Below are positions 25,029-58,890 of a DNA stretch of 64,000 bases, one piece after another. The DNA comes from Lytechinus pictus (lineage: Eukaryota). A model generated the notes under the pieces. It had not been told where the DNA came from. It saw only the letters and a program-made list of their open reading frames with translations, and searched no databases. The DNA lies in NCBI RefSeq assembly GCF_037042905.1, contig NC_087247.1, positions 41,664,001 to 41,728,000 on the forward strand. Direction: 5' to 3'. The number at the start of each line of letters is the position of its first letter. The first letter of the stretch is position 1. A program made the position numbers and the translations under genes.

Positions 25029-25070
25029 ATGGCGAAAATATGGATGTTATCACTTCTGGTCATCTTCATG
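25029..25070 (+). CDS. Gene B exon 1: start codon and signal peptide
   Basis: caaaATGG context, [14 protein letters not shown], phase-0 donor ATG|gtaaat. Joined to the next exon it gives [22 protein letters not shown], a typical signal peptide. The link across a 16-kb intron is inferred. Confidence 0.65.
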
Positions 25071-28000: not shown

Positions 28001-31000
28001 TATATGAGGTAACCAGGCTGTATCCTGAAAATTAACCCGTGAGGGCGCTTTTTTCAAAATGGCCGCCAAATTTTCAGAACATTTGAATTTTCGTACATAG
28101 ATTTTGACATGAACATTTCATTGCCACAAAATTAGTGTCATATGAAAGACAAATAAATTTCCTACAATTTGGTACCATTTACAGGGGATAAATAAGTCAT
28201 TTGGCTGAGATTTTAAGTAGAAAACTGCATTTTTTGTCATTTTTTTCAAAAAATTGAAAATTTTGCAAATACATGATTTTACATAATTCTAAGAAAAATG
28301 AATCAATTATCTTGAAATGTTCCAAAAATCTTTATTGATATACTATTATCATGTGGATGAAATTCCAACTCTGTATCATTCTTTTTAGCAAATTTATAAG
28401 GTATCAAACTTGAATACTTCAATTTCAGAAATGTCGCTTTTTGTATGCATTTTCATAGACTAATACGTATAACATGTATAATATGTATAATGTATAGTTA
28501 CAAATTAAATGCAATTATCTCTGCTCGTTAATCACTTGGATAGTTAAAAGTAGGCTTTTCTCTATCAGCTACATAAAACAAAATGTTGGCACATCAAGGC
28601 CTAACACTCTCATGGGGTGGGGGTGTCGAAGCCCCCCCCCCCTTGGCTATATCATGTTGTTGTATATTGCCTATTTGTTGCAAAAAATCACTGTTTTTTG
28701 GAGCACCCATTGAAGCAAAAACAGGCATTTCTACTATACAGTACAACCACTTTGATTGCTTTGAAACCACTTGGATAGGAAAGAGTAGGCTTTGTTCTAC
28801 CAGCTACATCCAAAGAAGTGCCAACATCGAAGCCTACCCCTCTCGGGGGGGGGGGGGGGCTTTTGCTTAATATTGCATATTTATTTGAAAATTCACAATT
28901 TTTTTAGGCCAAAGAGCGTTTGTGCTTTGTTGTACACCCCATTTTATTGATTTGAAACCACTTAGAAAAGAGTATAGTTTGTTCTACCAGCTACATATAA
29001 ATAAGCACTGGCACATCGAACCCTAGCCCTCAGTCTCAGGGGCTGTCTAAGTCACCCCCCTCTATATCAAGTATATTGCCGATTTATTGGATATTTCACC
29101 ATTTTAGATCACCCATTGAGGCAAAAGCGCGTTCCTACTATATATATAGTACAGCCAATTTTATTTTCTTGCAATGACTTTGAGAAGAAAGAGTAGGCTT
29201 TGCTCTATCAGCTACATAAGTGTTGGCAAATCGAAGCCTATCTCCTTCAGGCGGCTTTCGAAGTTACCCCACTAATTTTCGGTATTTGGCTATTTGTTGA
29301 AAAGTCACCATTTTGGAGCCCCCATTGAAGCAAAAAGGTGTCTCTGATATATAGTTCTGCCACTTTTATTGCCTTGAAACCATTTAGAGAGGAAAGAATA
29401 GGCTTTGCTCTACAGGGTTGTTTGATTTAAATCATGTCGATTTAAATCATGATTTAAATCGCGATTTAAATCACTTGATTTTTTTCAAAAAAATCACTGA
29501 TTTAAATCAACTTTTATGAAAAAAATTAATTTTCTCTATTTTCTCTTCTTCTTAACAGATATTTTCAATGTAATCATTTTCATTTCTGTTCCACATGCTT
29601 TAGAGATACTTTAAAAGAATGATACACCCTCATGGAGTCTGATTTAACAGTAACACCACTGTTTTATTTTCAAATTGTAAAACAAGCAAAACTGATGAAA
29701 ACAACAAGTTTCCAACGAAGTAATGATAAATAACTCTTTGTATGTACACCAAACTGTTAAATCTTCAATAAAATAATATATAAAATCTACAAAGGTGCTC
29801 AAAGTCCACAACTCGGATACTTTTACAAAACAGCTGAACTACTTGTATGTACCTCCTTCTTGTTACTATTAGTACCCATTCTTTCAATTACTTAAGTTGC
29901 AAAACCCTTTGTTTATTAGCTATTACCAGCTGTTAGTTGGGAAGTCCCCCATGTGATAGTTCTAGGAAATATTCCTAGCTAAAATCCCCCATGTGATAAT
30001 TCTAGGAAATAATCCCAGCTAGAATTCCCAAGGGCAGTATAGGAACCCTAACAGGCCTTTAATAATGTCAATTTTGTTGGAAATTCTCAAGTTCTTTGAG
30101 TACTTCATGCATTGGAGTAACACTTCGGATGTTTTGAACTGACTGATATAAAAATTTCAAGAGTTTAAATGTATACATAATACATAACATTACTTGGGCT
30201 TCCATAAAATGTCCCTCTCTATAATGCAAATGAATTAAAAAAAAAAAATTACCTGTATATAAGTGGATTATTGTGTCAAATAGTACAATACACAATGTTC
30301 AAAAGACTACTTGACCACTATTATTGGTGTAAAACAGTTTAAATATAGTTTAAAACTTGTTAAGTGTGACCATTATTTTTCGTTGGAAAAAAATCCAAAA
30401 AAATCTGATTTAAATCATAAAAATCTGATTTAAATAAAAAAAAAATCAGATTTTTTTATTTTTTTTAAAAAATCAAAAAAATCAACAACCCTGTTGCTCT
30501 ATCAGCTGCATAATTTTGTGCTGGCAAATAAAAGCCTACCCCTTCCGGGGGCTGTCGAAATCAGCCCCCTCACCTCTTTGCGTTATTGCCTATTTATTGG
30601 AAATTCACAATTTTTGAGCCCCCATTGAGGTAAAGAGGCATCACTGATATATAGTTCTGCCACTTTTACTGCCTTGAAACCAATTAAGGAGGAAAGAATA
30701 TGCTCTGCTCTATAAAGAAGTGCTGGCACATTGAAGCATACCCATCTGGGTGGCTGTCAAATCTCCCCACCCCTCTTGCATTATTGCCTAATTATTTGAA
30801 AATTCACAATTTTTGAGCCCCCATTGAGGCGATATGCACTTCTGCTGTATAAAACACCCAATTTCTCTTTCTTGAAACCACTTGGAGAGGAAAGAGTAGG
30901 TTCCCCTCTTTCAGATATATATAACGAATTGCTGCCATATCGAAGCCTGACCCACTTCAGGGGACGATACATGTAGATGTTACCCCACCTTTTTTACGAT

Positions 31001-40000: not shown

Positions 40001-43000
40001 GCGGGCGCTATACCACTGAGCCACCATATACCAGGTGGCATTGTTTAATGAAAAATAATGGCAAAGTGATGATATCATCAAATCTAAGCCATCATCACTA
40101 GCTTCATGATATGCTGCCTATTTAATATTAATTTTATTTTGTGCCCAGTGTAATAAGTTGAGCAATTTTAACAATTTTCCTTGCATTCAAAAGCATGTCA
40201 TTTTGGCACGAGATTGACATCATGTATATTGAGAAGTTTTCAATGTTAAATTTTCGTCGACCGAGACAAAAGGTTTACTGTAAACAAAGAGAAACATTTA
40301 ACGGTACTGACAAATTTGTTGTAACCGTGCCAAACTTCAATTAAAAAGAATATTGTCATTACTTTCAACAGTGACTTTCCTCGATGAATTCGTGAATCTA
40401 TTAGACCTATTCATCCATTATATACAAGTAAAGGGTAATTGTAATCATGTATTGTTGTTTTTATGTCATGTCGAAAGGGATGATGAAATTTCCATCAGAA
40501 AGAATGTGTCCTCTGTATGAAAAGCATTTATAGAACTTGCTGTGAAACTTAAAATAAGATAATTTACATATAATGTGGTACGAACTTTCACATAATGTGC
40601 GGAATATTGCTAATTTTAGAATCCCGACAGAATCTTTCTCTATGAATAGGCCAAGAGGACCGAGCAAAATTAAGAGCATTTTTTTAATGAGAAGGATCAC
40701 TTGAAACAATATGGTTGTAATAAATGTCAAATGATCTCATGATAGATGACCTCGGCCGATAACACACAAACCCGCCTTAAGACGCCACTAAATTGTTCTT
40801 CCGTTACAAATGACTTTTTTCGCAAGTGTCCTAATTGATTGCGATCTGAAGTTGATTGTGATAATTCGCCATTAAAAAACCTGTCCAATATTTAATCGAG
40901 ACGACAAAATTGCACTGTTTGAGAACATTGAAGTAAAATTCAAATGTTCTGGTATTTTAAGAATGAAGCTGATATTTCATTAAACTATATCTTTCAAGTG
41001 AGACTTCCATTTCAGAGCATCTTTTTCTGCATCATTTAGCGATTCATTTATACTAACTATTCATCTACTAATAAGAGAGATAATGCACACATGTATTTGA
41101 TTAAATTTTGTGTTCTCAGTTAAATGATTCACTGTATATAATATAAATTTTAATTCACTGATTTTCAATATTAAAGTTCAACGTTTGTTGATAATAATGT
41201 TTTTTTTTTTTTTTTTTGGGGGGGGGTGGGGGCGTTTTTTCCTATTTCCCTGTTTGTACATACGTATATGCATGTAAAATTGTGAAATATTCTAATTTCT
41301 CTCCTGCGGATTATATAGTATTAGTTCAAGTGAAAACACTATTGAGATATAAACTAACTTCTACAATTGGTTTTATTTATATTGTTCTCGAATGTTAGAG
41401 CATCGTATACGTATCATGTGAAGTGACGGTCTCATTTAGACTGAAGGCTTACCTGAATGAGAATAGCAGATTGCTTGATGGCCAATGCTGTGATAATGTA
41501 GATCGACCATGCAGTGACAGATGTGATAACAGCTTCGATCTCTGCTTCGGGCCCCCGGGAAAGTAAGTGTTGCATTCTGGGTAACTACTATGTATGAAAA
41601 TTAGGATACAAAAATCAGCGATTATAAAGAATTTAATACTATTGTAACATTACTATTATAACTCATACGAGATAACATATACCTCTTTCATAATAATGAT
41701 AAATAAATAAATACATACATAAATTATAACAATAACACAAGGCATAAGCGATTTTGTGTCTCGCCCACTTATGAAAATAACCAAAAATATTGTCATTTGC
41801 TAGGGCACGCAACAGAATTGTATCAAAACTTCATTGTGAAATGACTGGGATAGAATAACACTTGTCATAAGAGTCTTGCCCATAAACTTTAATGTTGACC
41901 TCAAAATGAACTTTGACCATACCATGTGACCTCCGAACACAATAACATGCAGGTCTCCTAAGTACACCTACAACCCAAGTTTGGTCGAAAAGTGACTTAC
42001 GGTTGCGGAGTTAGGTGTCATAAGAGAGTCTTGCATGTAAACTTTAACGTTGACCTGAAAATGACCTTTGACCTTACCATGTGACCTCCGACTGTAGCAT
42101 AACATGCAGGTCCCCCAAGTCTATCTACCATCCAAGTTTGGTTGAAAAGTGACTTATGGTTGTGGAGTTAGGTGTCATAAGAGAGTCTTGCATGTAAACT
42201 TTAATGTTGACCTGAAAATGACCTTTGACCTTACCATGACATGCAGGTCCCCCAAGTCCATCTACCATCCAAGTTTGGTTGAAAAGTGACTTACGGTTGC
42301 GGAGTTAGGTGTCATAAGAGAGTCTTGCATGTAAACTTTAACGTCGACCTGAAAATGACCTTTGACCTTACCATGTGACCTCCGACTGTAGCATAACATG
42401 CAGGTCCCCCAAGTCCATCTATCATCCAAGTTTGGTTGAAAAGTGACTTATGGTTGTGGAGTTAGGTGTCATAAGAGAGTCTTGCATGTAAACTTTAACG
42501 TTGACCTGAAAATGACCTTTGACCTTACCATGTGACCTCAGACTGCATCCCATCATAACATGCAGGTCCCCCTAGTCCATCTACCATCCAAGTTTGGTTG
42601 AAAAGTGACCTACGGTTGTGGAGTTATGTGTCATAAGGTTTGTGACGGACGGACGACAGACGACATTTGGATCCCTAAGTCTCGCCTTCATCTCCGGTGG
42701 GCCAGACAAAAAATGATAATAAATAAATAAATGAATGAATATATAAACAAATAAATAAAGATAAGAATAATACTGATAATGGTTTTGAAAACACGAATTA
42801 AGATAAGATTTAAAAATAAAACTAAACAGTACTACTCATAAAATGACACTCGATTGAGCTAAAGAGTAATCAATATAATTATCATAATGAAGGGATGAAG
42901 GAAATGCTTTTTTTTTGTGGAAATACACTATCATAAGTTCATATTCAAACATAAATAGTATATGAATGATCGAATGCATGTGCTCCGTAAGATGCATTCC

Positions 43001-46000
43001 CAAACACTTCAATGTTATCTCAATTTAAATCTAGTATATGAATAGTGTATAATATGAGACAGGCTATGACAGGGGGTCCAAATATATGTTCATTATAGAT
43101 TAAAGATAAGATGTCTGGTTTCTGCAAAAACTTTACGGCCCCTAATATAAGGCAGTTTCCACGGCTTCCTGGTTAGTTACCAGACTATTAAACTGTCATT
43201 CCTAAAATAGCACCCTTCATCTCCTTGCTTTCAAACTAGCTGTAGATAGATGGAATGGACAACACCCAGTTGTTCATTTACATTCAGGTTATGATATATA
43301 CATGTGTATTATATTAGAAGCTTTCTAGTAATCATGAGCAAAAACATATTCATATGTATATTAGAAATTGGGTCGGAAAATGCTTGCTTCTGTAGCGGAA
43401 ATTTAGGTCCGAATATATTGAATTTCGAATAAAATATTTGGAATTTGAACAATTTAATATATACAAACCGTTTTACATAACATGTTATGTTAAAATTAAA
43501 AATTAACAATTGAAAGAAAAAACGTTTTTAAGAATGTTAGTTGTAAACAAATAAAAAATATACTGCAAACGTAAGGTGGAACGTCTTCAAAGCTATGATA
43601 TATTTTAATTTTCCTGTAATCTCCTTAACATGACCAAATAATTTTTTTTTTCAAATAATAAGGTCTGTATATTCTATAAAATTTATAATAGTGCTTATAG
43701 ATACTAACGACAAAATATAATGTCTATTTTCAGTGACATCGACATGGCGAATTGTCCTTACGGACGCTTACGAACAGGGGCTGTCTTTGACAACCAGGAC
43801 GACTTCCCATTTCCTGAAATCCTCTCTGGAAACATTCCCAATCCGATGTTGATTAAGGTCCGGGAATGGGAGGTAAGCCAATAATGTGATGATAGGTGAT
43901 TCTATTATGACTGTAATCTTAACATTTCAGTAAGAATTTAGTATTTACAAATTTAACTAGGCTGTCTGCCTAGAAACGGCGTATTATATAATGTGGGCAT
44001 GCCTCCGACGAAGATTCTGCTAGGATCGAAAGCTTATGCCCCTTATGACTTTCTAATTTACTCCATTGGCTCTCTTTTATTAGATAAGCATTTTTCAGCA
44101 GCTTCTTTTTGCCACAAATTTAACTTAGTAGAATAGACTTAGATCCAAAGGCAGCGGTGAATGGGGTTGGTGTATCCCACAGATTTAGTGTGGTATCCAA
44201 GATGATGAAGAAGTCTTAGAGATAATTTTGGATAACACTAATCGAATAAAGATAATGAAACATGTTTTGCTATAATTTGTGAACCAAATCGAAACAATTG
44301 AAAATCATCACCAGTATTATTTACCTCTGAGCTGATGGAGGGAGGTACACATGCCCACCTATTACATGGATTTCAATAATTTTGTTGCTGTCTGCCTAGA
44401 AACGGCGTATTATAAAATTTGGGCATCCAAGTGACAAATCAAATGTAGATGTATATTATTTGAACAAAATTAGTAACTTTCAGGATCTAGATTCATGTTT
44501 CAGATAATGTTTAGTTAGTGCTTAAAAAATCCAAAGAGCTAACTGGTAAGGTAGCTTAATCAAATCCGATAGAAAATCCATGCATGGTCAGGGTTGACAA
44601 GGAGCTCAGTTAGAATTTGAAAGTCACATTGTTTATATTAATACAAAAAAAGACGTCACGACATGGACAACAAGCAGCCTGTAAACTCTTCGACACTCTC
44701 TTCAGGTGTCACTTCAAAAGCAATCGGCATACAATCTGACATATACCTTTCAACGCATTACGCATAATGCCGATTTTATCTTCCATGTGTGAAGAACCTT
44801 AATTGGCAAGCATTCAAATTTGTCAGGTAGTGAAATATATGACGATAAGTATATACCACGGTTCTATTCCATTCGTTTGAAATATCTCTCAAAATTACAT
44901 AAGTTTGAAAAATAAAACATCCTTTTTGATCCTCTTAATGATTTCACTGGAATAACGGTTGTCATACCATAACTTACCATGAAGTATGACCTTATTTAAA
45001 TTAGATGAGACGACACTGTTAGGATTCACGTTTTCTCAACGGCTTGTGAACTGATTTCGAAATTGATGGTGATTTTTCGTTGATTTGAAGAAGAAAAAAA
45101 ACGTTTGTTTTATTTCATTCAAACTTATGTCATGGCATTCATATAGATATAAAGATTTTTATCTCTGTTGTCATCTGGCTTATCTCGTCTCACATGATCC
45201 TCATGGGGAGGGGTGATCTGTTTAGCTTGTAACTAGGGTAAACTGCTATTAATGATTGAAAGGATATAAAGTTTTATATCATGAAAAGGACATTAATATA
45301 TCACATAACGATGATTGATCCTATAAATGATATTCAACGATAAATATTGTACTATCAGATAAACATCATATTTCGAAATCTTTAGGGTATTGTGAGATTC
45401 TGGGGGAAAAAAAGGACAGTGTTAGGAAGTTTTTCCTCGACCAGACTCCTAGGCATTTTCCTTAACGACGGAACATAATCATTGAGACAAGGCGGATGGA
45501 TTGGGGTACTTCATCACAAAGTCAAACGGATAGACATCACGTACCGCTTGTTTTTTTAAAACCGATATGATAGTGGCCATGAGATAACCATCTTTGTAAT
45601 TCTTCAATACATTGGCTTTCTTCTTTTTCCTTTACAGAGAGGTATCAGGGTAAAGGTCGGTGTTTGGGATATCGATCTAGGGCATGAGCCAAACAGTGTC
45701 GATTTCTACACGAGGAATTTCGCCATCCGACCCGACATCAACTTGATCGAAGCGCCAATCTTTAGATACACGCTTACTGGTGATGGATACACAGAGTAAG
45801 AAATTATCCTAATTCCTATAAGGCTTCTATGTATAAAGCTGATTGCTCGGACTTGAATAAAACATATAAATAGACATAAAATCATACCTTTCGATGTTGA
45901 TTCTTCATATGACGCTGAAAGAGAAATGTGCAACTGAGAAGATTCAGCTGGTCTCGTTTTAAAGCAAGCTTAGAATAAGTGCATGGTATGCATGGCACAA

Positions 46001-49000
46001 GCAAGAATTATTTTTGGTTGTCGTATGTAAATGAAGTAATAATAACAACCAAAACGAGTCTAAAACTTACTTACCTATTTTACCCATATCATATAAGAAG
46101 ACTAAAATCATGCAATTAAGACAGTTAATTTAGTGATAGGTCCGCAGGAAATAAAAACTTCAGATCACCAATTGTGTTGAAAACTTCGTCACAAAGTCTA
46201 CTGCCTAATAATGTTCTCATCATTAACATATGAATATGTATCTTCTCTTCAATATTTATGTCTTTACCTTTTCTCACGAATATCTTCAATTTTTCCAGAA
46301 CGAAAGTGGAGATTAGAGTATATTGTTCTGAGCATTTCTATGGTGGCAGTTGCGATGTATATTGCAATCCTGGAGAAACGGGTCATTACAGTTGTAATAT
46401 CCTTTCTGGCGTGAAGGAGTGCTTCCCTGGTTGGGTTGGACCAGAATGCGATGTGGTGAGTCTTCATAATCATGATAATGAGGGTTCTATCAATAGAATA
46501 CTATCCTTGGAAAAATATTAACTCTACAAATTATCATTTGTAACCGTGTATGATCTGTAATGGCAAGAGAGTCAATGCTAGAGTATAGAAGAGTCTACGA
46601 TATCATTGATCGGATTCGGTTTTAGCTATACTTGCCGCCATCTACCCAGAAGATATTTGGATAACCAATAAAATACGAAAGCCTTGTATTATGGGAAAGC
46701 GATTTGCTATCCCTTGCTGGAAAGGTCCCGATACCAGGGTGTGGAGAAAGTTCATTCATTGTGAGCGGGCTAGCAAGCATTAGAAGGAGAAATATATTTT
46801 GCTAATAATATTTAAAAGACTAATGATCTAAATTCTCGATGTATTTGGTCGGTGTAATGATGAGTGCATAAACATATTTTCCGACTCCGACAACAATCAA
46901 AGGCATTTTCGATCGTTTATAATCATTAATCGACTGAGCATAACAATGGTATTATAGAATTGAAGACCACAAATTGCGCGATGGCGCATACACTGTTAGA
47001 AAATTTATCCTTAAAATAAAAGAAGTTCCTGCAGCAGAGTCTCGAGAACACCTGTAATCTTACCAGATTGCGTAATCTTACAGGAAATTGGTATTTGGTG
47101 TGTGGAACCTTACAAATTTCCTTAAATAAAACACAATTTTCCCCCTTTAAAACAGACCTGTTCTGTTAAATTGCAGAAAAATTCCTGTTTTATGAATTTA
47201 CAGAACGATTCTGTTATTGCTTTCTACAAAATCAGGTTTTTTTAACAGTGTACGTAGGAGCGATTATCTGGTAGCCTGAAGGAGTTGCGAGTTTAGTTTG
47301 GTCAAATGACAGGGTTATTAACCTAAAACAACATGACTTAAATTTCCCGTCTTCTGACGATAAACTGTCTAGTCCTGCTTTGTGTCTTCAATTTTGGTGA
47401 AAAAGTGAATTACTTTCAATGTATGCTATTGATAAAAATTCTTTGTTGTTCCTTTATTTTCGATTTTCTGGACAGAATGTAAATGAATGTGCATCTCGAC
47501 CGTGTATGAACGGTGGTACTTGTGTCGACTTGGAAAACGGATATGAATGTACATGTGTGGACGGAGCAATAGGTAAGGGTTCTACGATTCTAGAAAATAA
47601 GTTTATATCGTCCATCCATCTCTTTTCTTATTCTTTATATTGAGCGTAAGTAGTCAATAGAGGATAAATTTTGAAGGGGGATTTGCCCTCCAAGAAAGTC
47701 AATCACACAGCAAGTGTCATATAATAGGGATTCTTAAATGACCAAAAGGTTGCATTCTTGGAACCGGGGACCATTCGAGTAATTTAAGACATTTACCGGA
47801 TGCCATCCATGGCACTTTGACCTAAAGCTCAGCCGAGGTTAATTCATGTCAGTATTGTCAGCCGAAAGAAAACGTCTCATCCGACATGTCTGGTAAAAGT
47901 AATTTAACTACCCGAAAGGTAAATGTTTTCAGTAAGTCAATGTCGATATCAATTTATGTATTTTCAGGAACCCACTGCGAGCACAATCCTGACGACTGCA
48001 GAGGAGTCGAATGTCTACACGGCGGACAGTGCATTGATGGCTATGCGTCCTTCACCTGCCGATGCCAACCTGGTTACACCGGGATCATGTGCCAGTTGAA
48101 CATTGACGAGTGTGCATCATCGCCATGCAGAAATGGTGCGCTATGTCAAGATCAAGGAAATGCCTATTCATGCTATTGTCTGGCGGGATTCTATGGTGAA
48201 AACTGTCAACACGAATTTGATGAATGTAAAATACTCAAACCCTGCAGGAATGGAGGAACATGCTATGACAGAGTAGCATCCTTTCACTGCGAATGTATGA
48301 CAGGATTCGGTGGTCCTGACTGCTCCGTTAACCTTGATGAATGTGCAAGCAGCCCGTGTGCGAATGGCGCTCAGTGTATCGATTCGGTTGCTGGTTTTAT
48401 CTGTCTTTGCAACGAAGGGTTCCGAGGACTTCTTTGCGAGGAAGACGTCAATGAATGTGCGAGCAACCCTTGCGAAAACGGAGCGAGGTGTGTTGACTTG
48501 GTAGACTCATACGAATGCCAGTGCCTTCCAGGATATCTCGGAGAGAATTGTCAGTTGGAATCAGATGAGTGTGCTAGCAGTCCTTGCTTAAACGGAGGCA
48601 GGTGCTTGAATCGAATAAACGAATTTCGATGTAGATGTCCAGCGGGTTACAGTGGAAGCAGGTGTGAGGTCAACGTCGATGAGTGTGAAAGTTTACCATG
48701 TTTTAATAACGCCACCTGCACAGACCAAGTTGATGGTTTCCAGTGCCAGTGTACACTAGGGTTCACAGGAACAACTTGCAGGATAAATACTGATGAATGT
48801 CTCAGCTCTCCTTGTCAGAATGGAGGTCAGTGTATTGATGGTGTAAATGGATATTTATGTGAATGCAGACCAGGTTACTACGGAAAGAACTGTAGAAGAG
48901 ACATCAATGAATGCGCGAGTGATCCTTGTAAGAACGGAGCGATTTGCCGTAATTTAGTTGACGGCTACGAGTGTGAGTGCATGGTTGGGTATGAAGGGAA

Positions 49001-52000
49001 ACACTGCACAACCAACATCAACGAATGCGCCAGCAATCCCTGTCTTAACAGAGGTTCATGTATAGATCAGATCAACGGATATTTCTGTAGATGTAGGCCA
49101 GGGTGGGGTGGGCGGCATTGCGAGATCAATGCCAATGAATGTTCAACGGAACCATGCATGAATGGAGGACGGTGCATCGACGCTGTCAATGGATTTTTCT
49201 GCCGTTGTCGACCAGGATTCCGTGGTCGCCGTTGTGAGATCGACAACAACGAATGCGCAAGCAACCCATGTTTGAATGGAATGTGTTTAGATGGGATTAA
49301 TCGATTTATTTGTCACTGCATACAGGGCTTCACTGGAAAGAATTGTGAAATTAATATCAATGAATGTGCATCTCGCCCATGCAAAAATAATGGAGTCTGT
49401 CGAGATGGTGTGAGTGGTTACACTTGCGTTTGCCCAGCAGGCTACGGAGGCAAGGACTGCCACATTAACATCAACGAATGCTCTACTGGTCAGTGTCAGA
49501 ATGGAGCTACGTGCGAGGATGGAATCCATGGATTTACCTGTCACTGTGCACCTGGATTTGAAGGTATTCTCTGTGAAACGAACATTGATGAATGCGCAAG
49601 CAGACCTTGCATCAATAATGCAAGATGCATTGATGGGGTCGACAGTTACAGATGCGAATGTTTGATCGGGTATGAAGGATACAACTGTGAGGTCAACATC
49701 AATGAATGTGCTTCAAATCCTTGTCGTGGATTGTCCACCTGTGTCGATATGATAAATGCGTTCCGGTGTGACTGTATTGACGGATACTTCGGCAGCTACT
49801 GTGAGACTGAAGTCAATGAATGTCTAAGTAACCCTTGCTTGAACGATGGACAATGTGTCAATCGTTTAAATGGTTACAGATGTAGTTGTCAACCAGGATA
49901 TGAAGGCCCTCATTGCGAATTTAATATCAATGAATGTAGCCGTCAAACCTGTCAAAACAACGGCAGATGCATAGATGGCGTTGGCAAGTTCTTTTGCTAC
50001 TGTCGTTCTGGATTCCGCGGGAAACACTGTGAGGAAAATATCAATGAATGTGTGAACCACAAGTGTAAAAATGGCGCAGGTTGCAGAGATGCGTTGAATG
50101 GTTATTCTTGCATGTGTACCGAAGGTTATACGGGGATTTTCTGCGAAGAAGACATCAACGAGTGCAATTTAATGATCGAGCCTTGTCCACCTGAAACTTC
50201 ATATTGTAAAAATCTTATCGGGACCTATGAATGCTCGAACATAGCTCCAACCACAATTCCACCACCAACAACTACCGAAGACCCATGTGGGTCAATGCCG
50301 TGTGAGAATGGGGCCACCTGCATAGTCACGTCAGAAGGAAAAAGGTACACCCCCATCTCTTTATGGGTAGATATTAAACATAAACATTTATAATAGAAAA
50401 AACAATTATTTTAATTGGTACACTAAATTTTAAACCGTTTTGGGGGACAGATTTGTAAGCCCAAAGGAATTAAAACGTGATTCAGGCATTTACAATTGTA
50501 TGTAATTACAATTGTTAGAGAGATGAAATACACGACAAAGACAGAAACATATCTGACGGAAAAATAAAATTGTTTTTTTTTTCTTTTGATATATTACCCT
50601 GATATAATGTGTTCTACCATTCCATCACCCCTCACTTCCTTTACATGAAACGTAGTCTTTATGAGCAATATGTTTCCCTCTCTTTTTATTTCTGAAATAG
50701 ATGTATTTGTCCCGGTGATTTCGTGGGAGAAAATTGTGAAATTTCGTTTGGTAAGTACATAATATTTATGTCAGCCAAAATTTGCAGTCACTGTGATATA
50801 TCCATCAAGAGATGTCAAAATGGCATCTTTAGCATGACCTTTTCTCAAAGAGGTAAATTTCAATCGATACGTTAACATTCCTGCTAAACTGGTTGCCTCC
50901 GATTCGACCCCATGATATTTTACTCATTCAAAATTCGTGCAAAAATATAACAAACTGACAAAAACACTTGTATCGCCCATTGGACACGCATGATAATGTT
51001 TTGCAGGGCAATGTCTAGCAGGTGTGTTATAAAAAGAGCAAAATTTTAAGGTTCATTTCACTTGTCTTTATATTGCACATTACGACTTGCAGCTAACACA
51101 ATTACTGAGGTGACACTTGAAAATCACATCGACCCATCACTACCTGGTCTGGAGAAACGATTGGCAGAACTGATCCACACTGCTACAGGGAAAGAACCTC
51201 ATATCATGGTGGAAATCGATATCGTCAATGCCATCAACGGGTCATCATCAATCACAGGGTATGAAATAAACTATTTCTCGTAGTCAAAATATCGATAAAC
51301 CCATGATTCGAAGCATCAAAATATAACATCCTTACCAAACTGTCGGCCGCACAGAACGTCAAAGTCAAAACATTTATTTCAATGTGTAAGTAATGCATTA
51401 TTGTAACATTAGGCATCGCTGCCACATTACAGGTTGCAACAGGGCCTCAGCGCATTGCTATGCGTCAGTACAGATTGTTAAGAGACTAAACAAATGATGA
51501 CGGTACAGCTAAATTTACAGGGTTCTCGCTAAAGAAGCAATTGATGAAAATACTAGTGAGTGTTACCTCATTGGCATACGCGCACAAAGTTTTGTGGTTG
51601 CGGATCTGTGACCCGGAGTTACAACTATTGTAACTTTACCATTTTTTTGCAACTACCATTTAACATTGATTTTGATTGGCTGTTGACTCGTGTTACCATG
51701 GTAACTGTCATAATGAAAACGTTACAATAATTGAAACTCGTTGTAAAATTGGGCTCTGGACTTCACCGAGTTTACCCCCAATAGACAAATAATTCGTTCT
51801 CTCTCGCTTGTATAGGGAGTGATATAGACACGGAATGTCTGTCTAAACAGAAGCTCAATAGTCTAGTAACATAATGTATTCAATACTTAATTAGGATGAT
51901 ATGGCATTTATCTGTTATTTTTCTAGAGTGGGGCAAGAATAAATTTAGATTTAAAATGGGTGAGGCTGATAATCTGCATGCAATGCACTAAGGAGAGCAC

Positions 52001-54455
52001 TTGTAAACAGCGCACTCGTTTTCGAATGTCCACCTATACTACCGTTCGAAAGCTGCCTACAGTCTTTCAGGAGCAACTCAATGACATCCCTCCATTCTCT
52101 AAACAATGATAATAATGACAGAAACCATCGAGCGACTGTTAATTATTCGAACTTACTCTACCTGGTGCCAGAGTAGAACGTCAAGATGTTTGGTGTTTAA
52201 TGCCTTCAAAAGTTCAGAACTTTGATGGCTTCAGAACTATAATGGCACACTTATAACCAACCTTGACGATCAGGGGTGTACATATGTGACCCTGTGGGAT
52301 TCACATGGTTCAAATGGGGGATGACGCAATAGATCACCCCTACACCTTCGGAATTTAAACCAGTGTTGACGACTTAAACTCTGATTCAAGTTGCACCACT
52401 GCATCATCAGTTCATCACTATTACTCTAAAATGTGTTTAACCCGCCATCAAAATGTCTAATGAGGAACTTCATTCGAAGAGTATTACAGACATAGAGGGA
52501 ATATTTAGAACTCATCCACCACTTGATTGATATAATTACAGATAGTATTTCATTGTATTCATAAAGGATTCCTGGCCGAAGTATTTAATATACTGTTTTA
52601 CTATTTGAATTTTCTTGTACATTACAGAATGGCGTTTACAACCGTTGCATTCAACATGAGCGTCTTCAATTCAACCTTCAATGAAGACTCTTTAAAACTT
52701 GCCTTATTAACCCTCTCAAGAGAGGAACAAGATCTCATCATGAGCCCTTATAAAATATTTAATGAAACACCAGTAGTGGTTGAATTCAAGAATCCAGACA
52801 GGGTAAGTCAATGTAATAATAAGTACATAATTCAATCTTAACATTTTTCAGATTATATACATTACATAGCATTTTTGCTCTTAGAAGTTGAAAAGACTCA
52901 TTTGAACAACCAATAAATATTCTCCATTTATGATTTTTAAATAAAAAAAAAACCAACGCAAAACATGAGAAATACCTTACGATACTTCCAAGTAAATTTT
53001 GTGAGGTTTTTAGCTTGGATACTAGTACAACGTAACACAAATTCGTCACATTTGATATTTACTCCTGATCAAACCTGGGTCAAGAATATGGTTCCATTGT
53101 CATAATCGGCATTTTGATCCACGTTAACCATACGAAAAAGCATATACATGTAACTAAGCAGAGGTATCTCCATGTACATTTTCTTTTCAGACGTGGTCAG
53201 AACGGAACTGGTTTGTCATATTTCTTCTCTTTGTCTTACTAATATCAGCTGCAGTATTCGGCATCTGGTACTTGGATAAGTAAGAAATAGATTCTCTAAA
53301 AAAGTTTCTATCTACTTGTGTGTCTAATTGTTGTACTTGCACAGTACAGGAATAATAATTAACAGCTTGTCCAACCCTACCCCCTCTCTCTTTTTCTTCC
53401 TAAGCTCTGTCTATCCCTCTCTCAGCAATGAAGTTGAGGGATTGGCGAAGCATAGCGAGTGGAAAAGCATTTTCAAATTGTTATTTCAGTTTGGAAAATA
53501 TGATTTAAACAGATTAAAACTTAAAAAGCAAACACTGAAAATTTAATGAAATAAATGAAATTTGGTATTTTAAAGTTATGCACTATTTCTGTGAAACAAT
53601 TCAATGCATATCATCATGAATGTTCATTGATCGTGCTGACGATGCCCCCCCCCCCCCCCACACACACAAACTTTAAAGAAATTAATTGCATGAAATGGAA
53701 AGCAATCAACATCCTGCCCCATGCACATAAAACATTATCAATAATTAGGCCTATCGTACAGTTAGGCAATAGTTTTTGTAACTTATTTAGATACAAGGGA
53801 GAAACTAGTCAAACTAGAAACTGGTAAACCATAAATGACCAATGTAATATTTTTGTTTATACGGTCACATATGATGCAAAATCTTGAAAGGAACTTTTCC
53901 ATCCAAGTTCGATCAACTTTATAGTGTGTAGAGTTTTACATTTTGATTTATTTATTGGTATAAGTTCAGTCAGGATTTGATTTTAATTGACAGTAACTAC
54001 CAAACCCCCACACACCGATATTCAAACAGCTATTAAACTACGATCATGGGACTCTGCTCAAGCTTTAAAAAAGTAGGGTGTTCGTAATGTGTTTGCATTT
54101 TGATTGTGTGCCTTTAATACGAGTCTAAAACTACAGTACACCTTGAGGTAGACGTTGGATTCAAGGTAGTAAAAGAGTCATATCACAGGCTCACGGAATT
54201 TGCTGTCTGTACTTATACTCGGTTTGTTGTTTCTGTTGCTAAGGAGAAATGTTATGGGAATCTAATTTTTGTTCATATTGTAATTTAATGATGTTGCTTC
54301 AAAAGTGAATAGTACTTCTTAACCTCACGGTGTTCCGATTTCTCCCTCTGTTCCCTCTCTCCAGGCGATATCCGGCATGTGAAGGAGAAAGCAGAATGGG
54401 AAAATGGAAACGACTTTTAAACATCCCACAAGAGAAGGCTGCAGAAAAGAAATGA
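25029..54455 (+). CDS. Gene B: Delta/Serrate-like (MNNL/C2-DSL-multi-EGF) type-I membrane protein, non-canonical Notch-ligand-like, 1234 aa; exons 25029-25070, 41399-41562, 43734-43872, 45638-45795, 46299-46455, 47476-47572, 47968-50344, 50701-50750, 51093-51258, 52628-52802, 53191-53279, 54365-54455
   Basis: Twelve GT-AG-bounded exons join into one 3705-nt frame. Recognisable signal peptide, MNNL (CC..C..C..F.LC, CPYG, NP, W), six-Cys DSL, 21 full EGFs plus one truncated, TM helix and TGA at 54453-54455. Confidence 0.85.
27910..33272. mobile_element. Foldback non-autonomous DNA transposon, Academ-like
   Basis: TAT|TAGTCCGGGTTATAATTGAGC ... GCTCAATTATAACCCGGACTA|TAT. The outer ~700 bp of the arms are almost identical inverted copies; the inner arms are ~190-bp tandem units that switch orientation near 31110. 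TAG...CTA ends with a 3-bp TSD fit Academ. Confidence 0.85.
29413..30493. mobile_element. Non-autonomous hAT element nested in the foldback
   Basis: CAGGGTTGTT ... AACAACCCTG ends, subterminal GATTTAAATC palindromes and a perfect 8-bp TSD TTGCTCTA (29405-29412, 30494-30501). Confidence 0.9.
33747..33835. repeat. Small degenerate palindromic MITE relic
   Basis: TGCAGTCACA..GCGGCCGTAC ... GTACGGCCGC..TGTGCCTGCA inverted arms. Confidence 0.45.
34649..35603. mobile_element. Tc1/mariner-type MITE
   Basis: TA|CAGTGCGTA.AAAAAAAA.TTACACTT.GAAAA ... TTTTCAAAGTGTAAACTTTTTTTTGATACGCACTG|TA; inverted TTGAGTGAGCAC internal motifs. Confidence 0.85.
35725..35950. mobile_element. Short CAC-ended MITE at a TA site
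   Basis: TA|CACTCTTAAAAAGGTTGGGCAAAA ... TTTTGCCCAACATTTTAATGTG|TA. Confidence 0.6.
37727..37830 (+). promoter_or_regulatory. Candidate internal promoter (CCAAT plus TATA box) in gene B intron 1
   Basis: CCAAT at 37727 and TATAAATA at 37823-37830, followed ~170 bp later by donor CTG|gtacgt at 38001/38002. Motif-only evidence. Confidence 0.25.
39758..40026 (-). mobile_element. tRNA-derived SINE with (TTA)n tail
   Basis: Minus strand GGTGGCTCAGTGG (A box) ... GGTTCGATCCC (B box), then a body and an (ATT)n microsatellite at 39758-39803. Confidence 0.8.
41399..41562 (+). CDS. Gene B exon 2: N-terminal part of MNNL/C2 domain
   Basis: [54 protein letters not shown] resembles the Delta/Jagged N-terminus (L..F.N..G.L..G.CC...C...C...F.VC); donor AA|gtaagt. 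Confidence 0.85.
41737..42713 (+). mobile_element. Helentron/DINE-like non-autonomous element with five ~157-bp tandem repeats
   Basis: Starts ACAAG, with subterminal inverted repeat TGTCTCGCCCAC/GTGGGCCAGACA. Units start at 41864, 42017, 42174, 42311 and 42468, followed by a (GACG)n microsatellite, a 3' hairpin and an A-run. Confidence 0.8.
43734..43872 (+). CDS. Gene B exon 3: MNNL/C2 domain
   Basis: ttttcag|T GAC... gives [46 protein letters not shown] (C.YG...T, NP, W motifs); donor GAG|gtaagc. Confidence 0.88.
43961..44426 (+). repeat. 40-bp direct repeat (43961-44000, 44387-44426) flanking an insert that starts with a Penelope-type hammerhead-like motif
   Basis: GCTGTCTGCCTAGAAACGGCGTATTATA.AAT.TGGGCAT occurs twice with 2 mismatches. 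Confidence 0.8.
43995..44041 (+). ncRNA. Variant minimal type-I hammerhead-like motif
   Basis: CCGACGA-A, helix II GATTCT-gct-AGGATC, GAAA, palindromic AAGCTT, flanking GGGCAT/ATGCCC pairing; the core has C at the U4 position. Confidence 0.35.
45638..45795 (+). CDS. Gene B exon 4: C2 domain C-terminal strands
   Basis: Strong acceptor tttttcctttacag|; [33 protein letters not shown]...; donor GA|gtaaga. Confidence 0.85.
46299..46455 (+). CDS. Gene B exon 5: DSL domain
   Basis: [45 protein letters not shown] keeps the DSL six-Cys spacing plus the YG, GHY.C and GW.G..C motifs; acceptor ttttccag|, donor GTG|gtgagt. Confidence 0.92.
46991..47250. mobile_element. CACTG-ended MITE at a TA site
   Basis: TA|CACTGTTAGAAAA ... 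TTTTTTAACAGTG|TA. Confidence 0.8.
47476..47572 (+). CDS. Gene B exon 6: first EGF
   Basis: gacag|AAT GTA AAT GAA TGT... gives [32 protein letters not shown]; donor G|gtaagg. Confidence 0.92.
47968..50344 (+). CDS. Gene B exon 7: 2.4-kb EGF-array exon (19 full EGFs, truncated EGF, Pro/Thr linker, start of last EGF)
   Basis: Core of ORF 47886..50393; acceptor tattttcag|GA ACC CAC TGC, donor AG|gtacac. Confidence 0.95.
50701..50750 (+). CDS. Gene B exon 8: end of last EGF
   Basis: aaatag|A TGT ATT TGT... gives [16 protein letters not shown]; donor G|gtaagt. Confidence 0.88.
51093..51258 (+). CDS. Gene B exon 9: first half of SEA/ferredoxin-like module
   Basis: ttgcag|CT AAC... gives [56 protein letters not shown]; donor GG|gtatga. 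Confidence 0.82.
52628..52802 (+). CDS. Gene B exon 10: second half of juxtamembrane module
   Basis: attacag|A ATG GCG... gives [58 protein letters not shown]; donor AGG|gtaagt. Confidence 0.85.
53191..53279 (+). CDS. Gene B exon 11: transmembrane helix
   Basis: ttcttttcag|ACG TGG... gives [29 protein letters not shown]; donor AA|gtaaga. Confidence 0.9.
54365..54455 (+). CDS. Gene B terminal coding exon: short cytoplasmic tail
   Basis: Long pyrimidine tract ...ccctctctccag|G CGA TAT... gives [30 protein letters not shown] then TGA. Confidence 0.75.
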
Positions 54456-55476
54456 TCTTCAAGGGACTATTGAAAAAATAGTTTGATTTAATTAATGAAC
54501 ATTTTATGCTATCCTTCAGTTTTGAGCAGCACTTAATACGAAGTTGGCAAGAAAACTCACCCTTCATGCCCTTAGATTGCGCCTTTCAGGACATGAAATC
54601 CCAAGTGTCAAGCACACTCAGGGGGCGGATCAAGGATTTTGGAAATCGTGGATGGCAAATAATCGAATTTAAAGGGAGAGTTTCTAGTCCCCCCCCCCCC
54701 CAATTATTGTATTCGACTCCTAAAAAAATCTGATAAGTAAAACAAAAACACAGACAGGGAAAAATAATTCATTCCTCAATACAAATTATAGGGCCAAAGC
54801 CTATCACCTCCATGGGGGGGGGGGGGGGCAGTGTACACAACATTCTTCCCAATAAACATGCCCTTTCCCCTCCGGTCTTGTGCCTGTAGCTTAAACCTTA
54901 TGTTCTGAATAATGTTTGTTTCCTTACAGGAATATATGCTCTTGATTACTAGATTTTCTAGTTTGTTCCTCCCACGTGATCATAGGATATTACAGAATAA
55001 TCTAATGACTTAATTTCAATAACACTCAGAAATTGAAAAAAAAAACGTTTTATCTGAAGTGCAACTATTATGCTTTATAATGACTTTAAGCATTAGAAAG
55101 ATATGGAAAACGATGAACTTGGAGATGAATGGGGAAACAAAACATTTATTATTTTTTCACATTATACTCCTGCTTTAGATAATTTGAAGACTCCTAAATC
55201 AAAATTGTTTTATTACCCGATTCTTAATACATGGGGAAATTATACTGCATTGTTCATTTTTTGGGATTTTTTGTGAAGTTCTTGCTTGTACATAAATGCC
55301 GAGTGTGCATGTTTTTTGTATTCATACTTCAAAAGTAAGAGTTCTGAACAAACTGAAATGATTGTGGGTATTACCTGAGATAGATAAGATTGGTGTACGC
55401 AAATTGAATTCCTTGAACATGTTAAATCCAAGTATTGTATTTCATTTATTAAAATAACATTGTCAATTGAAACATC

Positions 55477-58644: not shown

Positions 58645-58890
58645 NNNNNNNNNNNNNNNNNNNNNNNNNNNNNNNNNNNNNNNNNNNNNNNNNNNNNNNN
58701 NNNNNNNNNNNNNNNNNNNNNNNNNNNNNNNNNNNNNNNNNNNNNNNNNNNNNNNNNNNNNNNNNNNNNNNNNNNNNNNNNNNNNNNNNNNNNNNNNNNN
58801 NNNNNNNNNNNNNNNNNNNNNNNNNNNNNNNNNNNNNNNNNNNNNNNNNNNNNNNNNNNNNNNNNNNNNNNNNNNNNNNNNNNNNNNNNN
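58645..58890. other. Assembly gap (246 N)
   Basis: Run of N. Confidence 0.99.

What the first reader, a model, noticed from the sequence alone, without database searches (positions are those of the whole stretch)
25029..54455. Complete non-canonical Notch-ligand-like gene: C2-DSL head on a 21-EGF stalk with a SEA-like module and a short tail
Seen: signal peptide, MNNL/C2, DSL, 20 EGFs, truncated EGF and Pro/Thr linker, one EGF, alpha/beta module, TM and a ~31-aa tail. Known: Delta has ~8-9 EGFs; Serrate/Jagged has ~14-16 plus a vWC domain; both have long tails. This protein fits neither. Its N-terminal exons are small and mostly absent from the ORF track, so automated annotation would probably label it fibropellin-like or Notch-like. 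Inference: it belongs to a distinct DSL family acting as a decoy, adhesion or cell-surface coat protein.
Basis: partly seen in the sequence, partly recalled or inferred. Interest (0 to 1): 0.85.

Follow-up and report, generated by a model that had tools for sequence, protein, structure and literature searches.

The report
Non-canonical sea-urchin DSL membrane protein gene
This is a real, expressed sea-urchin gene for a membrane protein with a Notch-ligand head (C2 + DSL) on a long 21-EGF stalk and a SEA/MAD-like domain next to the membrane; it belongs to an uncharacterised family, found in echinoderms, molluscs and a nemertean, that is neither Delta nor Serrate.

Summary
A 12-exon gene on the + strand (ATG 25029, TGA ending 54455) has AG/GT at every intron. 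It encodes 1234 aa: signal peptide, MNNL/C2, DSL, 20 calcium-type EGFs, a 4-Cys truncated EGF, a Pro/Thr linker, one EGF, a ~120-aa alpha/beta module, a TM helix and a 30-aa tail. Transcript contigs from two sister species join exons 4 to 9 directly.

The genome, a Lytechinus-like sea urchin, has its own Delta and Jagged genes on another contig. It also has at least nine non-canonical DSL loci, including a tandem neighbour with a giant exon of about 72 EGFs.

Sea-star, crinoid, sea-cucumber, urchin, mollusc and nemertean proteins share the head. Many also share the juxtamembrane module and a W-x4-W-[YF] motif just before the TM helix. A sea-star module folds confidently as a ferredoxin-like SEA/MAD domain.

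The DSL receptor-binding face, the DOS-type EGFs and a long tail are missing, so a non-activating or adhesive role is likeliest. That role is untested.

The head tree places the protein outside Delta+Jagged, but the AU tests are weak. Relatives are already in databases under misleading automatic names, so this is a new variant of a known kind.

The parts
25029..25070 (+). Exon 1: start codon and first 14 aa of the signal peptide. In-frame ATGs also lie at 25002 and 25014.
   Evidence: GT donor at 25071 and good Kozak context. The X1 contig extends about 250 nt 5' of this by length arithmetic.
41399..41562 (+). Exon 2: end of the signal peptide and first part of the MNNL/C2 domain, with the CC..C...C cysteine pattern.
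   Evidence: Pfam MNNL E 1.9e-6. Aligns to sea-star and abalone heads. AG/GT.
43734..43872 (+). Exon 3: middle of the C2 domain.
   Evidence: tblastn to P0054, P0084 and P0043 at 32-47% identity. Alignment A1. AG/GT and phase fit.
45638..45795 (+). Exon 4: last part of the C2 domain.
   Evidence: Present in transcript contigs of X1, X15 and X5 and joined to exon 5. Aligns in A1.
46299..46455 (+). Exon 5: DSL domain (6 Cys, aa 177-218). The loop matching JAG1 R201-F207 is two residues shorter.
   Evidence: Pfam DSL E 5.9e-11. Joints 45795>46299 and 46454>47475. Alignment A1.
47476..47572 (+). Exon 6: most of EGF1, an ordinary calcium-type EGF and not a DOS-type short EGF.
   Evidence: Pfam EGF and hEGF; no EGF_DL_JAG or JAG1-like_EGF2. 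Joints seen.
47968..50344 (+). Exon 7 (2377 nt): end of EGF1, EGF2-20, the 4-Cys truncated EGF, the Pro/Thr linker and the first two thirds of the last EGF.
   Evidence: Pfam gives 20 EGF stretches. Cysteine-based repeat table. Covered end to end by transcript contigs. Listed differences to organism B are 19 synonymous and 9 non-synonymous.
50701..50750 (+). Exon 8: last third of the final EGF and start of the juxtamembrane module.
   Evidence: Joints 50342>50699 and 50749>51092 in three runs.
51093..51258 (+). Exon 9: first half of the juxtamembrane alpha/beta module (strand-helix-strand).
   Evidence: Present in transcript contigs. Aligns in A2. hhalign of the whole module to the family profile gives 88.7%.
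52628..52802 (+). Exon 10: second half of the juxtamembrane module (strand-helix-strand).
   Evidence: AG/GT and phase fit. Aligns in A2. hhalign. The junction was not seen directly.
53191..53279 (+). Exon 11: W-x4-W-F motif and the transmembrane helix.
   Evidence: Motif plus hydrophobic stretch. Weak tblastn to sea-star TM regions. AG/GT.
54365..54455 (+). Exon 12: 30-aa Lys-rich cytoplasmic tail and the TGA stop (54453-54455).
   Evidence: AG acceptor and phase fit. Words of 54365-54833 are held by the runs that hold the other exons.

Best explanation
**Shown.**
- The locus is an intact, transcribed gene under purifying selection.
- It encodes a type I membrane glycoprotein of a non-canonical branch of the DSL (Notch-ligand) superfamily. 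The same genome has separate canonical Delta and Jagged genes.
- The order of parts is C2 + DSL head, then 20 consecutive calcium-type EGFs, a truncated EGF, a Pro/Thr linker, one EGF, and a ~120-aa module next to the membrane. After these come a W-x4-W-F motif, the TM helix and a 30-aa tail.
- The module is homologous to one that folds as a ferredoxin-like SEA/MAD domain.

**Inferred mechanism.**
- The calcium-EGF array forms a stiff rod that holds the C2-DSL head tens of nanometres from the cell surface. There the head can engage an EGF-repeat partner, Notch or a Notch-like protein, on a neighbouring cell or in cis.
- Four of the five DSL receptor-face residues are changed or deleted. The DOS-type EGF1-2 are absent. 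The tail is too short to resemble the long tails that drive ligand endocytosis.
- The membrane-adjacent fold is of a kind reported to be mechanically weak.
- The protein therefore probably does not deliver the pulling force that activates Notch. It would act as a non-activating binder (competitor or cis-modulator) or as an adhesion/spacing molecule.
For: - **Gene model and transcription:**
- **Purifying selection:** among the listed differences to organism B, 19 are synonymous and 9 non-synonymous, over about 377 and 1513 sites. That gives pN/pS of about 0.12.
- **Head is a true C2-DSL:** Pfam MNNL and DSL. The head profile matches solved Drosophila Delta (94.6 bits), JAG1 (88.9), JAG2, DLL1, DLL4 and Serrate over positions 6-200.
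- **Not the Delta or Jagged orthologue:** own-genome Jagged and Delta loci lie on contig C7. In the ML tree Delta+Jagged form a clade (SH-aLRT 99). The window protein sits in an echinoderm group with urchin, sea-cucumber, crinoid and sea-star proteins.
- **Family signature:** W-x4-W-[YF] followed by a TM helix occurs in 17 fetched relatives and in no Jagged or Delta. The relatives are echinoderms, bivalves, gastropods, a cephalopod and a nemertean.
- **Module:** the window's module matches the family profile, built without it, at 88.7% probability (E 2.5e-6). Thirty shuffles reached at most 0.9%.
[quoted passage not shown] Best structural matches are PCDH15 MAD12 (Z 9.0), CDH23 MAD28 (8.7), CELSR1 (7.3), IA-2 (6.2), MUC16 SEA (5.8) and the Notch2 HD domain (5.6). 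Further matches are KIAA1549 (TM 0.66) and SEA or mucin-like entries.
- **DSL face:** the JAG1 residues F199, R201, R203, D205 and F207 form the Notch-binding face (PMC3415683). Here they are Y, N, deleted, G and T (alignment A1).
- **Missing canonical parts:** no DOS-type EGFs and no VWC.
- **Mechanics:** MAD12 is reported as mechanically weak (bioRxiv 10.1101/460097).
Against: - No functional or binding data exist for any member of the family.
- The AU tests cannot exclude that the head is sister to Jagged (p 0.19) or to Delta+Jagged (p 0.49). The window row is a long branch of 1.54.
- The fold was predicted for a sea-star homologue that is only about 15% identical to the window's module.
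- Canonical urchin Delta and Jagged also vary at some DSL face positions, so loss of Notch binding is not proven.
- The tail has several lysines that could still be ubiquitinated.
- Junctions of exons 1-4 and 9-12 were not read directly.
- No close orthologue of this exact gene was found among annotated proteins.
- Very few reads were found in the one raw RNA run that was laid.
Confidence: 0.6

Rival explanations
1. It is a working Notch ligand, a long, lineage-specific Delta/Jagged paralogue. It binds Notch through its C2-DSL head and activates it in trans, with the tail lysines sufficient for ubiquitin-driven endocytosis.
For: - The complete C2 and DSL domains keep all their cysteines and the conserved G-H-Y...G-W-x-G-x-x-C core.
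- The gene is under purifying selection.
- The tail holds several Lys residues.
- AU tests do not exclude a position beside Jagged or beside Delta+Jagged.
- Some accepted ligands (DLL4, the C. elegans DSL proteins) also lack DOS motifs (my own knowledge; PMC3415683 for the DOS definition).
Against: - Four of the five DSL face residues are lost, and the loop is two residues shorter (PMC3415683).
- The 30-aa tail has no PDZ motif and is far shorter than canonical tails.
- The genome already has canonical Delta and Jagged.
- An extra SEA/MAD-like module sits in the force path.
Confidence: 0.2
2. It has nothing to do with Notch. It is a cell-surface coat, adhesion or matrix-anchoring glycoprotein, like transmembrane mucins or fibropellins. 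The EGF rod and the SEA-like domain do the work, and the C2 domain binds lipid or another partner.
For: - The C-terminal layout (Pro/Thr linker, EGF, SEA-like fold, TM, short tail) resembles membrane mucins. Fold matches include MUC16 SEA, MUC1 and mucin-like proteins.
- The family has expanded in this genome to at least nine loci, with EGF numbers from a few to about 72. The loci lie in tandem and in clusters, as expected of surface or matrix proteins.
- The DSL face is degenerate.
- Notch-ligand C2 domains are known to bind lipid (PMC3888931, PMC5538765).
Against: - The C2-DSL head is kept intact across phyla, which suggests a conserved binding function.
- There is no avidin-like fibropellin end and no Pfam SEA hit.
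- There are no expression or localisation data.
Confidence: 0.2

Closest known systems
Serrate/Jagged (canonical DSL ligand)
   Same: Signal peptide, C2/MNNL, DSL, a long run of more than 16 EGFs and a single TM helix. The head profile matches JAG1 and JAG2 structures at 84-89 bits.
   Different: - No DOS-type EGF1-2 and no VWC/cysteine-rich domain.
- Tail of 30 aa.
- Extra SEA/MAD-like module and W-x4-W-F motif.
- The genome has a separate Jagged gene.
Delta / Delta-like (canonical DSL ligand)
   Same: The order SP-MNNL-DSL-EGF-TM-tail. It formally meets the minimal 'Delta' domain list of PMC5356439. The best PDB sequence match is Drosophila Delta, 94.6 bits.
   Different: - 21 EGFs rather than about 9.
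- No DOS-type EGFs and no ATEV end.
- Its extra domain makes it 'DSL-like' under that paper's scheme.
- The genome has a separate Delta gene.
- Grouping with Delta is rejected at p 0.038.
Unnamed non-canonical DSL proteins of echinoderms, molluscs and nemerteans. Automatic names include fibropellin-1-like, jagged-1-like and delta-like protein A/C/D. Examples: Acanthaster P0043, Asterias P0084 and P0054, Patiria P0125, Haliotis P0121, Mytilus P0169, Tubulanus P0149.
   Same: - The head is 30-38% identical.
- Ordinary EGFs follow the DSL directly.
- A module of about 120-130 aa lies before the TM helix.
- The W-x4-W-[YF] motif is present.
   Different: - EGF number: 3-17 in most relatives, 21 here, about 72 in the tandem neighbour.
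- The tail is usually 50-180 aa, against 30 aa here.
- The module is very divergent, 12-25% identity.
SEA domains (mucins, IA-2, Notch HD) and cadherin membrane-adjacent domains (PCDH15 MAD12, CDH23 MAD28)
   Same: [quoted passage not shown] KIAA1549 juxtamembrane domain, TM-score 0.66.
   Different: - No Pfam SEA hit.
- No conserved G/SVVV autoproteolysis motif. The window has N-G-S-S-S-I at the matching turn, but relatives do not.
- Sequence identity is 10-19%.
Fibropellins (sea-urchin EGF-repeat apical-lamina proteins)
   Same: Long arrays of calcium-type EGFs. This is the name automatic annotation gives to relatives.
   Different: This protein has a C2-DSL head and a TM anchor, and no avidin-like C-terminal domain was seen.

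Membership tests
DSL superfamily (C2/MNNL + DSL head) | N-terminal MNNL/C2 domain | tested here: met
   Pfam MNNL E 1.9e-6 on exon 2. The head profile aligns over positions 6-200 to solved C2-DSL structures of Delta, JAG1/2, DLL1/4 and Serrate.
DSL superfamily (C2/MNNL + DSL head) | DSL domain with six cysteines | tested here: met
   Pfam DSL E 5.9e-11, above the cut-off. Cys at aa 177, 186, 190, 200, 209 and 218.
Canonical activating ligand (Delta or Jagged) | Conserved DSL receptor face (JAG1 F199, R201, R203, D205, F207; PMC3415683) | tested here: not met
   Alignment A1 gives Y, N, deletion, G and T. The loop is two residues shorter.
Canonical activating ligand (Delta or Jagged) | DOS-type short EGF1-2 directly after the DSL | tested here: not met
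   The first EGF is an ordinary calcium-type EGF. There are no EGF_DL_JAG or JAG1-like_EGF2 hits after the DSL. The own-genome Delta does have these short EGFs.
Canonical activating ligand (Delta or Jagged) | Long cytoplasmic tail with E3-ligase docking sites or a PDZ end (ATEV in Delta; PMC5356439) | tested here: not met
   The tail is 30 aa and ends in E-K-K. Docking motifs were judged by eye only.
Serrate/Jagged | VWC / juxtamembrane cysteine-rich domain | tested here: not met
   No VWC hit on any exon. The juxtamembrane region is cysteine-free.
Serrate/Jagged | Orthology: groups with Jagged and is the genome's only such gene | tested here: inconclusive
   A separate Jagged gene exists and the ML tree places the window protein elsewhere. 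However, the AU test for grouping with Jagged gives p 0.187.
Delta | Orthology: groups with Delta | tested here: not met
   A separate canonical Delta lies at C7:24.27 Mb. AU test p 0.038, delta lnL 44.7.
Non-canonical C2-DSL-EGF-module-TM family (unnamed) | Juxtamembrane module of about 120 aa homologous to the family's | tested here: met
   hhalign of the window's module against a 23-sequence family profile gives 88.7% probability, E 2.5e-6, over 113 columns. Shuffles reached at most 0.9%.
Non-canonical C2-DSL-EGF-module-TM family (unnamed) | W-x4-W-[YF] motif abutting the TM helix | tested here: met
   W-S-E-R-N-W-F at aa 1177. The motif occurs in 17 relatives and in no Jagged or Delta among about 300 fetched proteins.
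Non-canonical C2-DSL-EGF-module-TM family (unnamed) | Head closer to the family than to canonical ligands | tested here: inconclusive
   Family representatives score at least 112 bits against the head profile, canonical heads 44-97 bits. The profile, however, contains the window's own exons. The ML group has SH-aLRT 83-89, and the AU test leaves the position beside Delta+Jagged open.
SEA domain (Pfam PF01390) | Sequence match to the SEA profile | tested here: not met
   No Pfam hit on exons 9 or 10 at E up to 1.
SEA domain (Pfam PF01390) | Ferredoxin-like SEA fold next to the membrane | tested here: met
   Shown for the sea-star homologue: pLDDT 89.5; Z 5.2-6.2 to MUC16 SEA and IA-2, and Z 7.3-9.0 to cadherin MADs. 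Carried over to the window by homology.
SEA domain (Pfam PF01390) | G/SVVV autoproteolysis site | tested here: inconclusive
   The window has N-G-S-S-S-I in the strand 2-3 turn, which is also an N-glycosylation sequon. The motif is not conserved in relatives. Cleavage itself is not testable here.
Fibropellin | Secreted EGF array with an avidin-like C-terminal domain | tested here: not met
   A TM helix is present and no avidin hit was found.

The most novel reading that the evidence does not exclude
These proteins form a third, ancient bilaterian class of C2-DSL transmembrane proteins, alongside Delta and Jagged. The class is defined by a SEA/MAD-like juxtamembrane domain and a W-x4-W-[YF] motif. 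It is retained in echinoderms, molluscs and nemerteans and expanded in sea urchins. The mechanically labile module would act as a fuse, so that the ligand binds Notch, or Notch-like EGF proteins, without transmitting the activating pull. That would make it a built-in, force-limited antagonist.
Probability: 0.15. Interest if true: 0.8.

Novelty: new variant of a known kind. Interest (0 to 1): 0.5.

Why it matters
Sea urchins are a classic model for Delta-Notch signalling, and reviews list only Delta and Serrate as their ligands (PMC10970066). This genome has at least nine further genes with a Notch-ligand head, and this one is expressed and under purifying selection.

If these proteins bind Notch without activating it, they would be unrecognised modulators of a pathway central to urchin endomesoderm and neural patterning. 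The shared juxtamembrane SEA/MAD-like domain also gives a concrete signature for sorting the poorly resolved 'Delta-like/DSL-like' proteins of invertebrates. It would help correct the misleading automatic names these proteins now carry.

Tried and rejected
- **Annotated copy or orthologue.** A search with the large EGF exon gave only generic EGF proteins at 52% identity or less. A search restricted to the unique linker region found nothing. No annotated self or close orthologue of 440-1496 aa is in that collection.
- **Direct sequence comparison of the tail module.** blastp and phmmer against all fetched proteins found nothing significant. Only the profile comparison worked.
- **Pfam on the module exons.** No family.
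- **Foldseek against the PDB.** No hit at E 0.001 or better, though cadherin MADs ranked first. The exhaustive aligner and the AlphaFold DB were clearer.
- **Earlier scan notes.** Nothing for this place.
- **Window 56-64 kb.** No informative gene, only an N gap, low-complexity sequence and ORFs with no obvious gene.
- **Window's own module.** It was not folded, because it is split over exons and cannot be given by reference. For the same reason no complex prediction with Notch was sent.
- **Raw RNA run X24.** About 6% of the run was read, and it gave too few reads on this gene to show junctions.
- **Pseudogene or assembly artefact.** Rejected because the frame is intact, all splice sites are canonical, transcripts occur in two species, and pN/pS is about 0.12.

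Full report
**1. What is in the sequence**

Scanning the + strand of 24-56 kb for stop-free stretches showed a 2.5-kb EGF-rich frame and several short cysteine-rich pieces.
- Pfam put MNNL on 41399-41563 (E 1.9e-6) and DSL on 46234-46518 (E 5.9e-11).
- It put an EGF on 47401-47640 and 20 EGF stretches in 47826-50390.
- It found nothing on the pieces downstream.

Sea-star and abalone proteins found with the big exon (P0043, P0054, P0084, P0036) aligned colinearly to four head exons, including one at about 43.7 kb that the ORF list missed. They also aligned weakly to a TM exon near 53.2 kb.

**2. Gene model and transcription**

Public transcript contigs laid on 45500-51499 show five GT..AG joints. 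These link 45636-45795, 46299-46454, 47475-47570, 47966-50342, 50699-50749 and 51092-51258.
- The joints appear in two runs of the window's species (contigs of 4333 and 4064 nt) and in a sister species about 2% diverged.
- Intron words are absent from these runs. Their share of sampled words was 0.45, close to the exonic fraction.

Concatenating these exons gives an open frame. Extending it by splice-site and phase logic gives twelve exons, all AG/GT, from ATG 25029 to the TGA ending at 54455. The CDS is 3705 nt, or 1234 aa.

The contig lengths fit this model with about 250 nt of 5'UTR and about 378 nt of 3'UTR. The same runs hold words of 54365-54833.

The junctions of exons 1-4 and 9-12 were not read directly. 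In-frame ATGs also lie at 25002 and 25014.

**3. Protein anatomy**

| Region | Position or detail |
|---|---|
| Signal peptide | N-terminus |
| C2/MNNL | six cysteines |
| DSL | aa 177-218 |
| 20 complete EGFs | aa 221-978, nearly all with the calcium-binding consensus |
| Truncated EGF | four cysteines |
| Pro/Thr linker | follows the truncated EGF |
| One complete EGF | ends at aa 1057 |
| Juxtamembrane region | cysteine-free, about 120 aa |
| W-S-E-R-N-W-F motif | aa 1177 |
| TM helix | aa 1182-1204 |
| Tail | 30 aa, Lys-rich |

**4. Selection**

Of the 28 listed differences between the window and the sister species' transcripts, 19 are synonymous and 9 are not. With about 377 synonymous and 1513 non-synonymous sites, pN/pS is about 0.12. 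The list is partial, because the tool keeps only the best-supported differences.

**5. Genomic context**

A whole-genome six-frame search for DSL found 11 loci in this 812-Mb assembly.
- One DSL exon is 98% identical to Lytechinus pictus jagged-1b-like. The genome is therefore a Lytechinus-like sea urchin, and this locus (C7:39.29 Mb) is its Jagged.
- C7:24.27 Mb is a canonical Delta, with an MNNL exon, a DSL exon and short DOS-type EGF1-2.
- The other nine DSL exons are nearest to non-canonical proteins. Five are clustered at C3:33.28-33.55 Mb, one is at C3:47.03 Mb and one is on C5. The remaining two are this gene and its tandem upstream neighbour.

The neighbour has the same head exons at window coordinates -6565 to -3911. 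It has a giant EGF exon from -3258 to 5039, an open frame of 2766 aa with 431 Cys. After that come an EGF exon (5234-5413), a module exon (5737-5964), and a W-x4-W-Y motif plus TM exon at about 8580.

**6. The family**

A profile of the head (alignment A1) was run against 1.84 billion representative proteins. It found 2674 proteins at E 1e-3 or better, 688 at 1e-10 and 122 at 1e-30.

Named members of the top hits:
- sea urchins (L. pictus, Diadema)
- a sea cucumber
- crinoids
- sea stars
- gastropods, bivalves and a cephalopod
- a nemertean
- cnidarians

Their automatic names include fibropellin-1-like, jagged-1-like, delta-like protein A/C/D and draper.

The same profile matches solved C2-DSL structures of Delta, JAG1/2, DLL1/4 and Serrate at 63-95 bits over its full length, so the head is a true C2-DSL. 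Canonical Jagged and Delta heads score 44-97 bits, against at least 112 bits for the listed family representatives. The profile includes the window's own exons, so this contrast is partly built in.

**7. Phylogeny**

A maximum-likelihood tree was built from 116 heads and 211 columns with the quick search.
- It gives a Delta clade (SH-aLRT 95) and a Jagged clade (99), joined at 99.
- The window protein lies elsewhere, in a 15-row echinoderm group (SH-aLRT 83-89).
- That group is next to a 74-row, mostly spiralian group (98).

The window row is a long branch. AU tests:

| Constraint | Delta lnL | p |
|---|---|---|
| Grouped with Delta | 44.7 | 0.038 |
| Grouped with Jagged | 31.6 | 0.187 |
| Sister to Delta+Jagged | 0.67 | 0.486 |

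The tree alone therefore does not settle a 'third class'. Orthology to Delta or Jagged is excluded mainly by the separate canonical genes and by the domain architecture.

**8. The juxtamembrane module**

Many relatives have 112-137 cysteine-free residues between the last EGF and the TM helix. Seventeen of them, plus the window protein, have W-x4-W-[YF] abutting the TM helix. No Jagged or Delta in the set does.

The modules are only 12-25% identical but share a strand-helix-strand-strand-helix-strand pattern. The window's module, taken from the spliced model, matches a profile of 23 family modules built without it. The match is 88.7% probability, E 2.5e-6, over 113 columns, and thirty shuffles gave at most 0.9%.

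AlphaFold2 on the Acanthaster module with this alignment gave pLDDT 89.5 and pTM 0.80. Structural matches:
- PCDH15 MAD12, Z 9.0
- Nup54 ferredoxin-like domain, 8.9
- CDH23 MAD28, 8.7
- CELSR1, 7.3
- IA-2 ectodomain, 6.2
- MUC16 SEA, 5.8
- Notch2 HD, 5.6
- GPR126 SEA, 5.3 (all)
- the KIAA1549 juxtamembrane domain, TM-score 0.66
- SEA-domain and mucin-like entries

Cadherin membrane-adjacent domains are the nearest solved folds.

**9. Mechanism (inferred)**

Canonical ligands use a conserved DSL face, which in JAG1 is F199, R201, R203, D205 and F207, together with DOS-type EGF1-2 (PMC3415683). Here that face reads Y, N, deleted, G and T, and the loop is two residues shorter. The first EGF is an ordinary calcium-type EGF. 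The tail is 30 aa with no PDZ end.

MAD12-type folds have their two ends close together and are predicted to unzip at low force (bioRxiv 10.1101/460097). I therefore think the protein most likely presents its head on a stiff calcium-EGF rod without delivering an activating pull. It would act as a non-activating binder or modulator, or as an adhesion molecule.

A working ligand and a Notch-independent coat protein remain live rivals. None of this was tested.

**10. Known or new**

The literature recognises 'Delta-like' and 'DSL-like' proteins of untraceable origin (PMC5356439). It also reports DSL expansions and a mollusc 'Delta2' in lophotrochozoans (PMC8166818). A review lists only Delta and Serrate for sea urchins (PMC10970066).

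One full-text search on five terms, requiring four of them, listed no paper that holds the term 'SEA domain' together with the DSL and Notch-ligand terms. That library is incomplete.

Relatives are already deposited under automatic names. I rate this a new variant of a known kind. The architecture and the family signature are the new points; the existence of odd DSL proteins is not.

Noticed in passing
window 1-8700 and about 6.6 kb upstream of the window (G000:C3:41657400-41672700): Tandem upstream paralogue with the same plan. Its MNNL, C2 and DSL exons lie at window -6565 to -3911. Its single giant EGF exon runs from -3258 to 5039 (2766-aa open frame, 431 Cys, about 72 EGFs). After that come an EGF exon at 5234-5413, a module exon at 5737-5964, and a W-x4-W-Y motif plus TM exon near 8580. 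Its DSL loop keeps more of the canonical face (K, R, D, I).
   Followed up: partly
G000:C3:33.28-33.55 Mb (L003-L006, L008); C3:47.03 Mb (L009); C5:53.41 Mb (L011): Seven further non-canonical DSL loci in this genome. Five are clustered within 270 kb, and two of those are near-identical copies that match L. pictus LOC129282693 at 90-91%. One DSL lies inside a 2565-aa open frame.
   Followed up: partly
window 46900-47300 and 51300-51499: Intronic stretches with very high depth in the transcript-contig sets (thousands, against about 29 for the exons) and many loose ends. They are probably expressed interspersed repeats inside introns 5 and 9.
   Followed up: no
window 28583-28870 (+) and 32288-32599 (-): Two ORFs in the 16-kb first intron begin with nearly the same about 35 residues in opposite orientation. 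Similar Gly/Pro-rich ORFs recur at 30.9-31.8 kb. This looks like a repeat family. My quick DNA comparison did not align the two copies, so the point is unresolved.
   Followed up: partly
window 58645-58890 and flanks 58.5-59.2 kb: A 246-base run of N flanked by low-complexity Ser/Thr/Tyr-coding simple repeats.
   Followed up: no
window 60000-64000: GC rises to 0.41-0.50, and there are many overlapping ORFs of 70-120 aa, mostly on the minus strand, with no obvious gene. Possibly a transposable element or the edge of another gene.
   Followed up: no
window 51222-51236 (aa 1109-1114): N-G-S-S-S-I sits in the turn between strands 2 and 3 of the module, the topological place of the G/SVVV self-cleavage site of SEA domains. 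It is also an N-glycosylation sequon and is not conserved in relatives.
   Followed up: partly
window 48450, 50199, 51149 and others: At several sites (N414D, S997P, L1081M) the transcripts of both species agree with each other and differ from the assembly. The assembled individual carries the minority allele there.
   Followed up: partly
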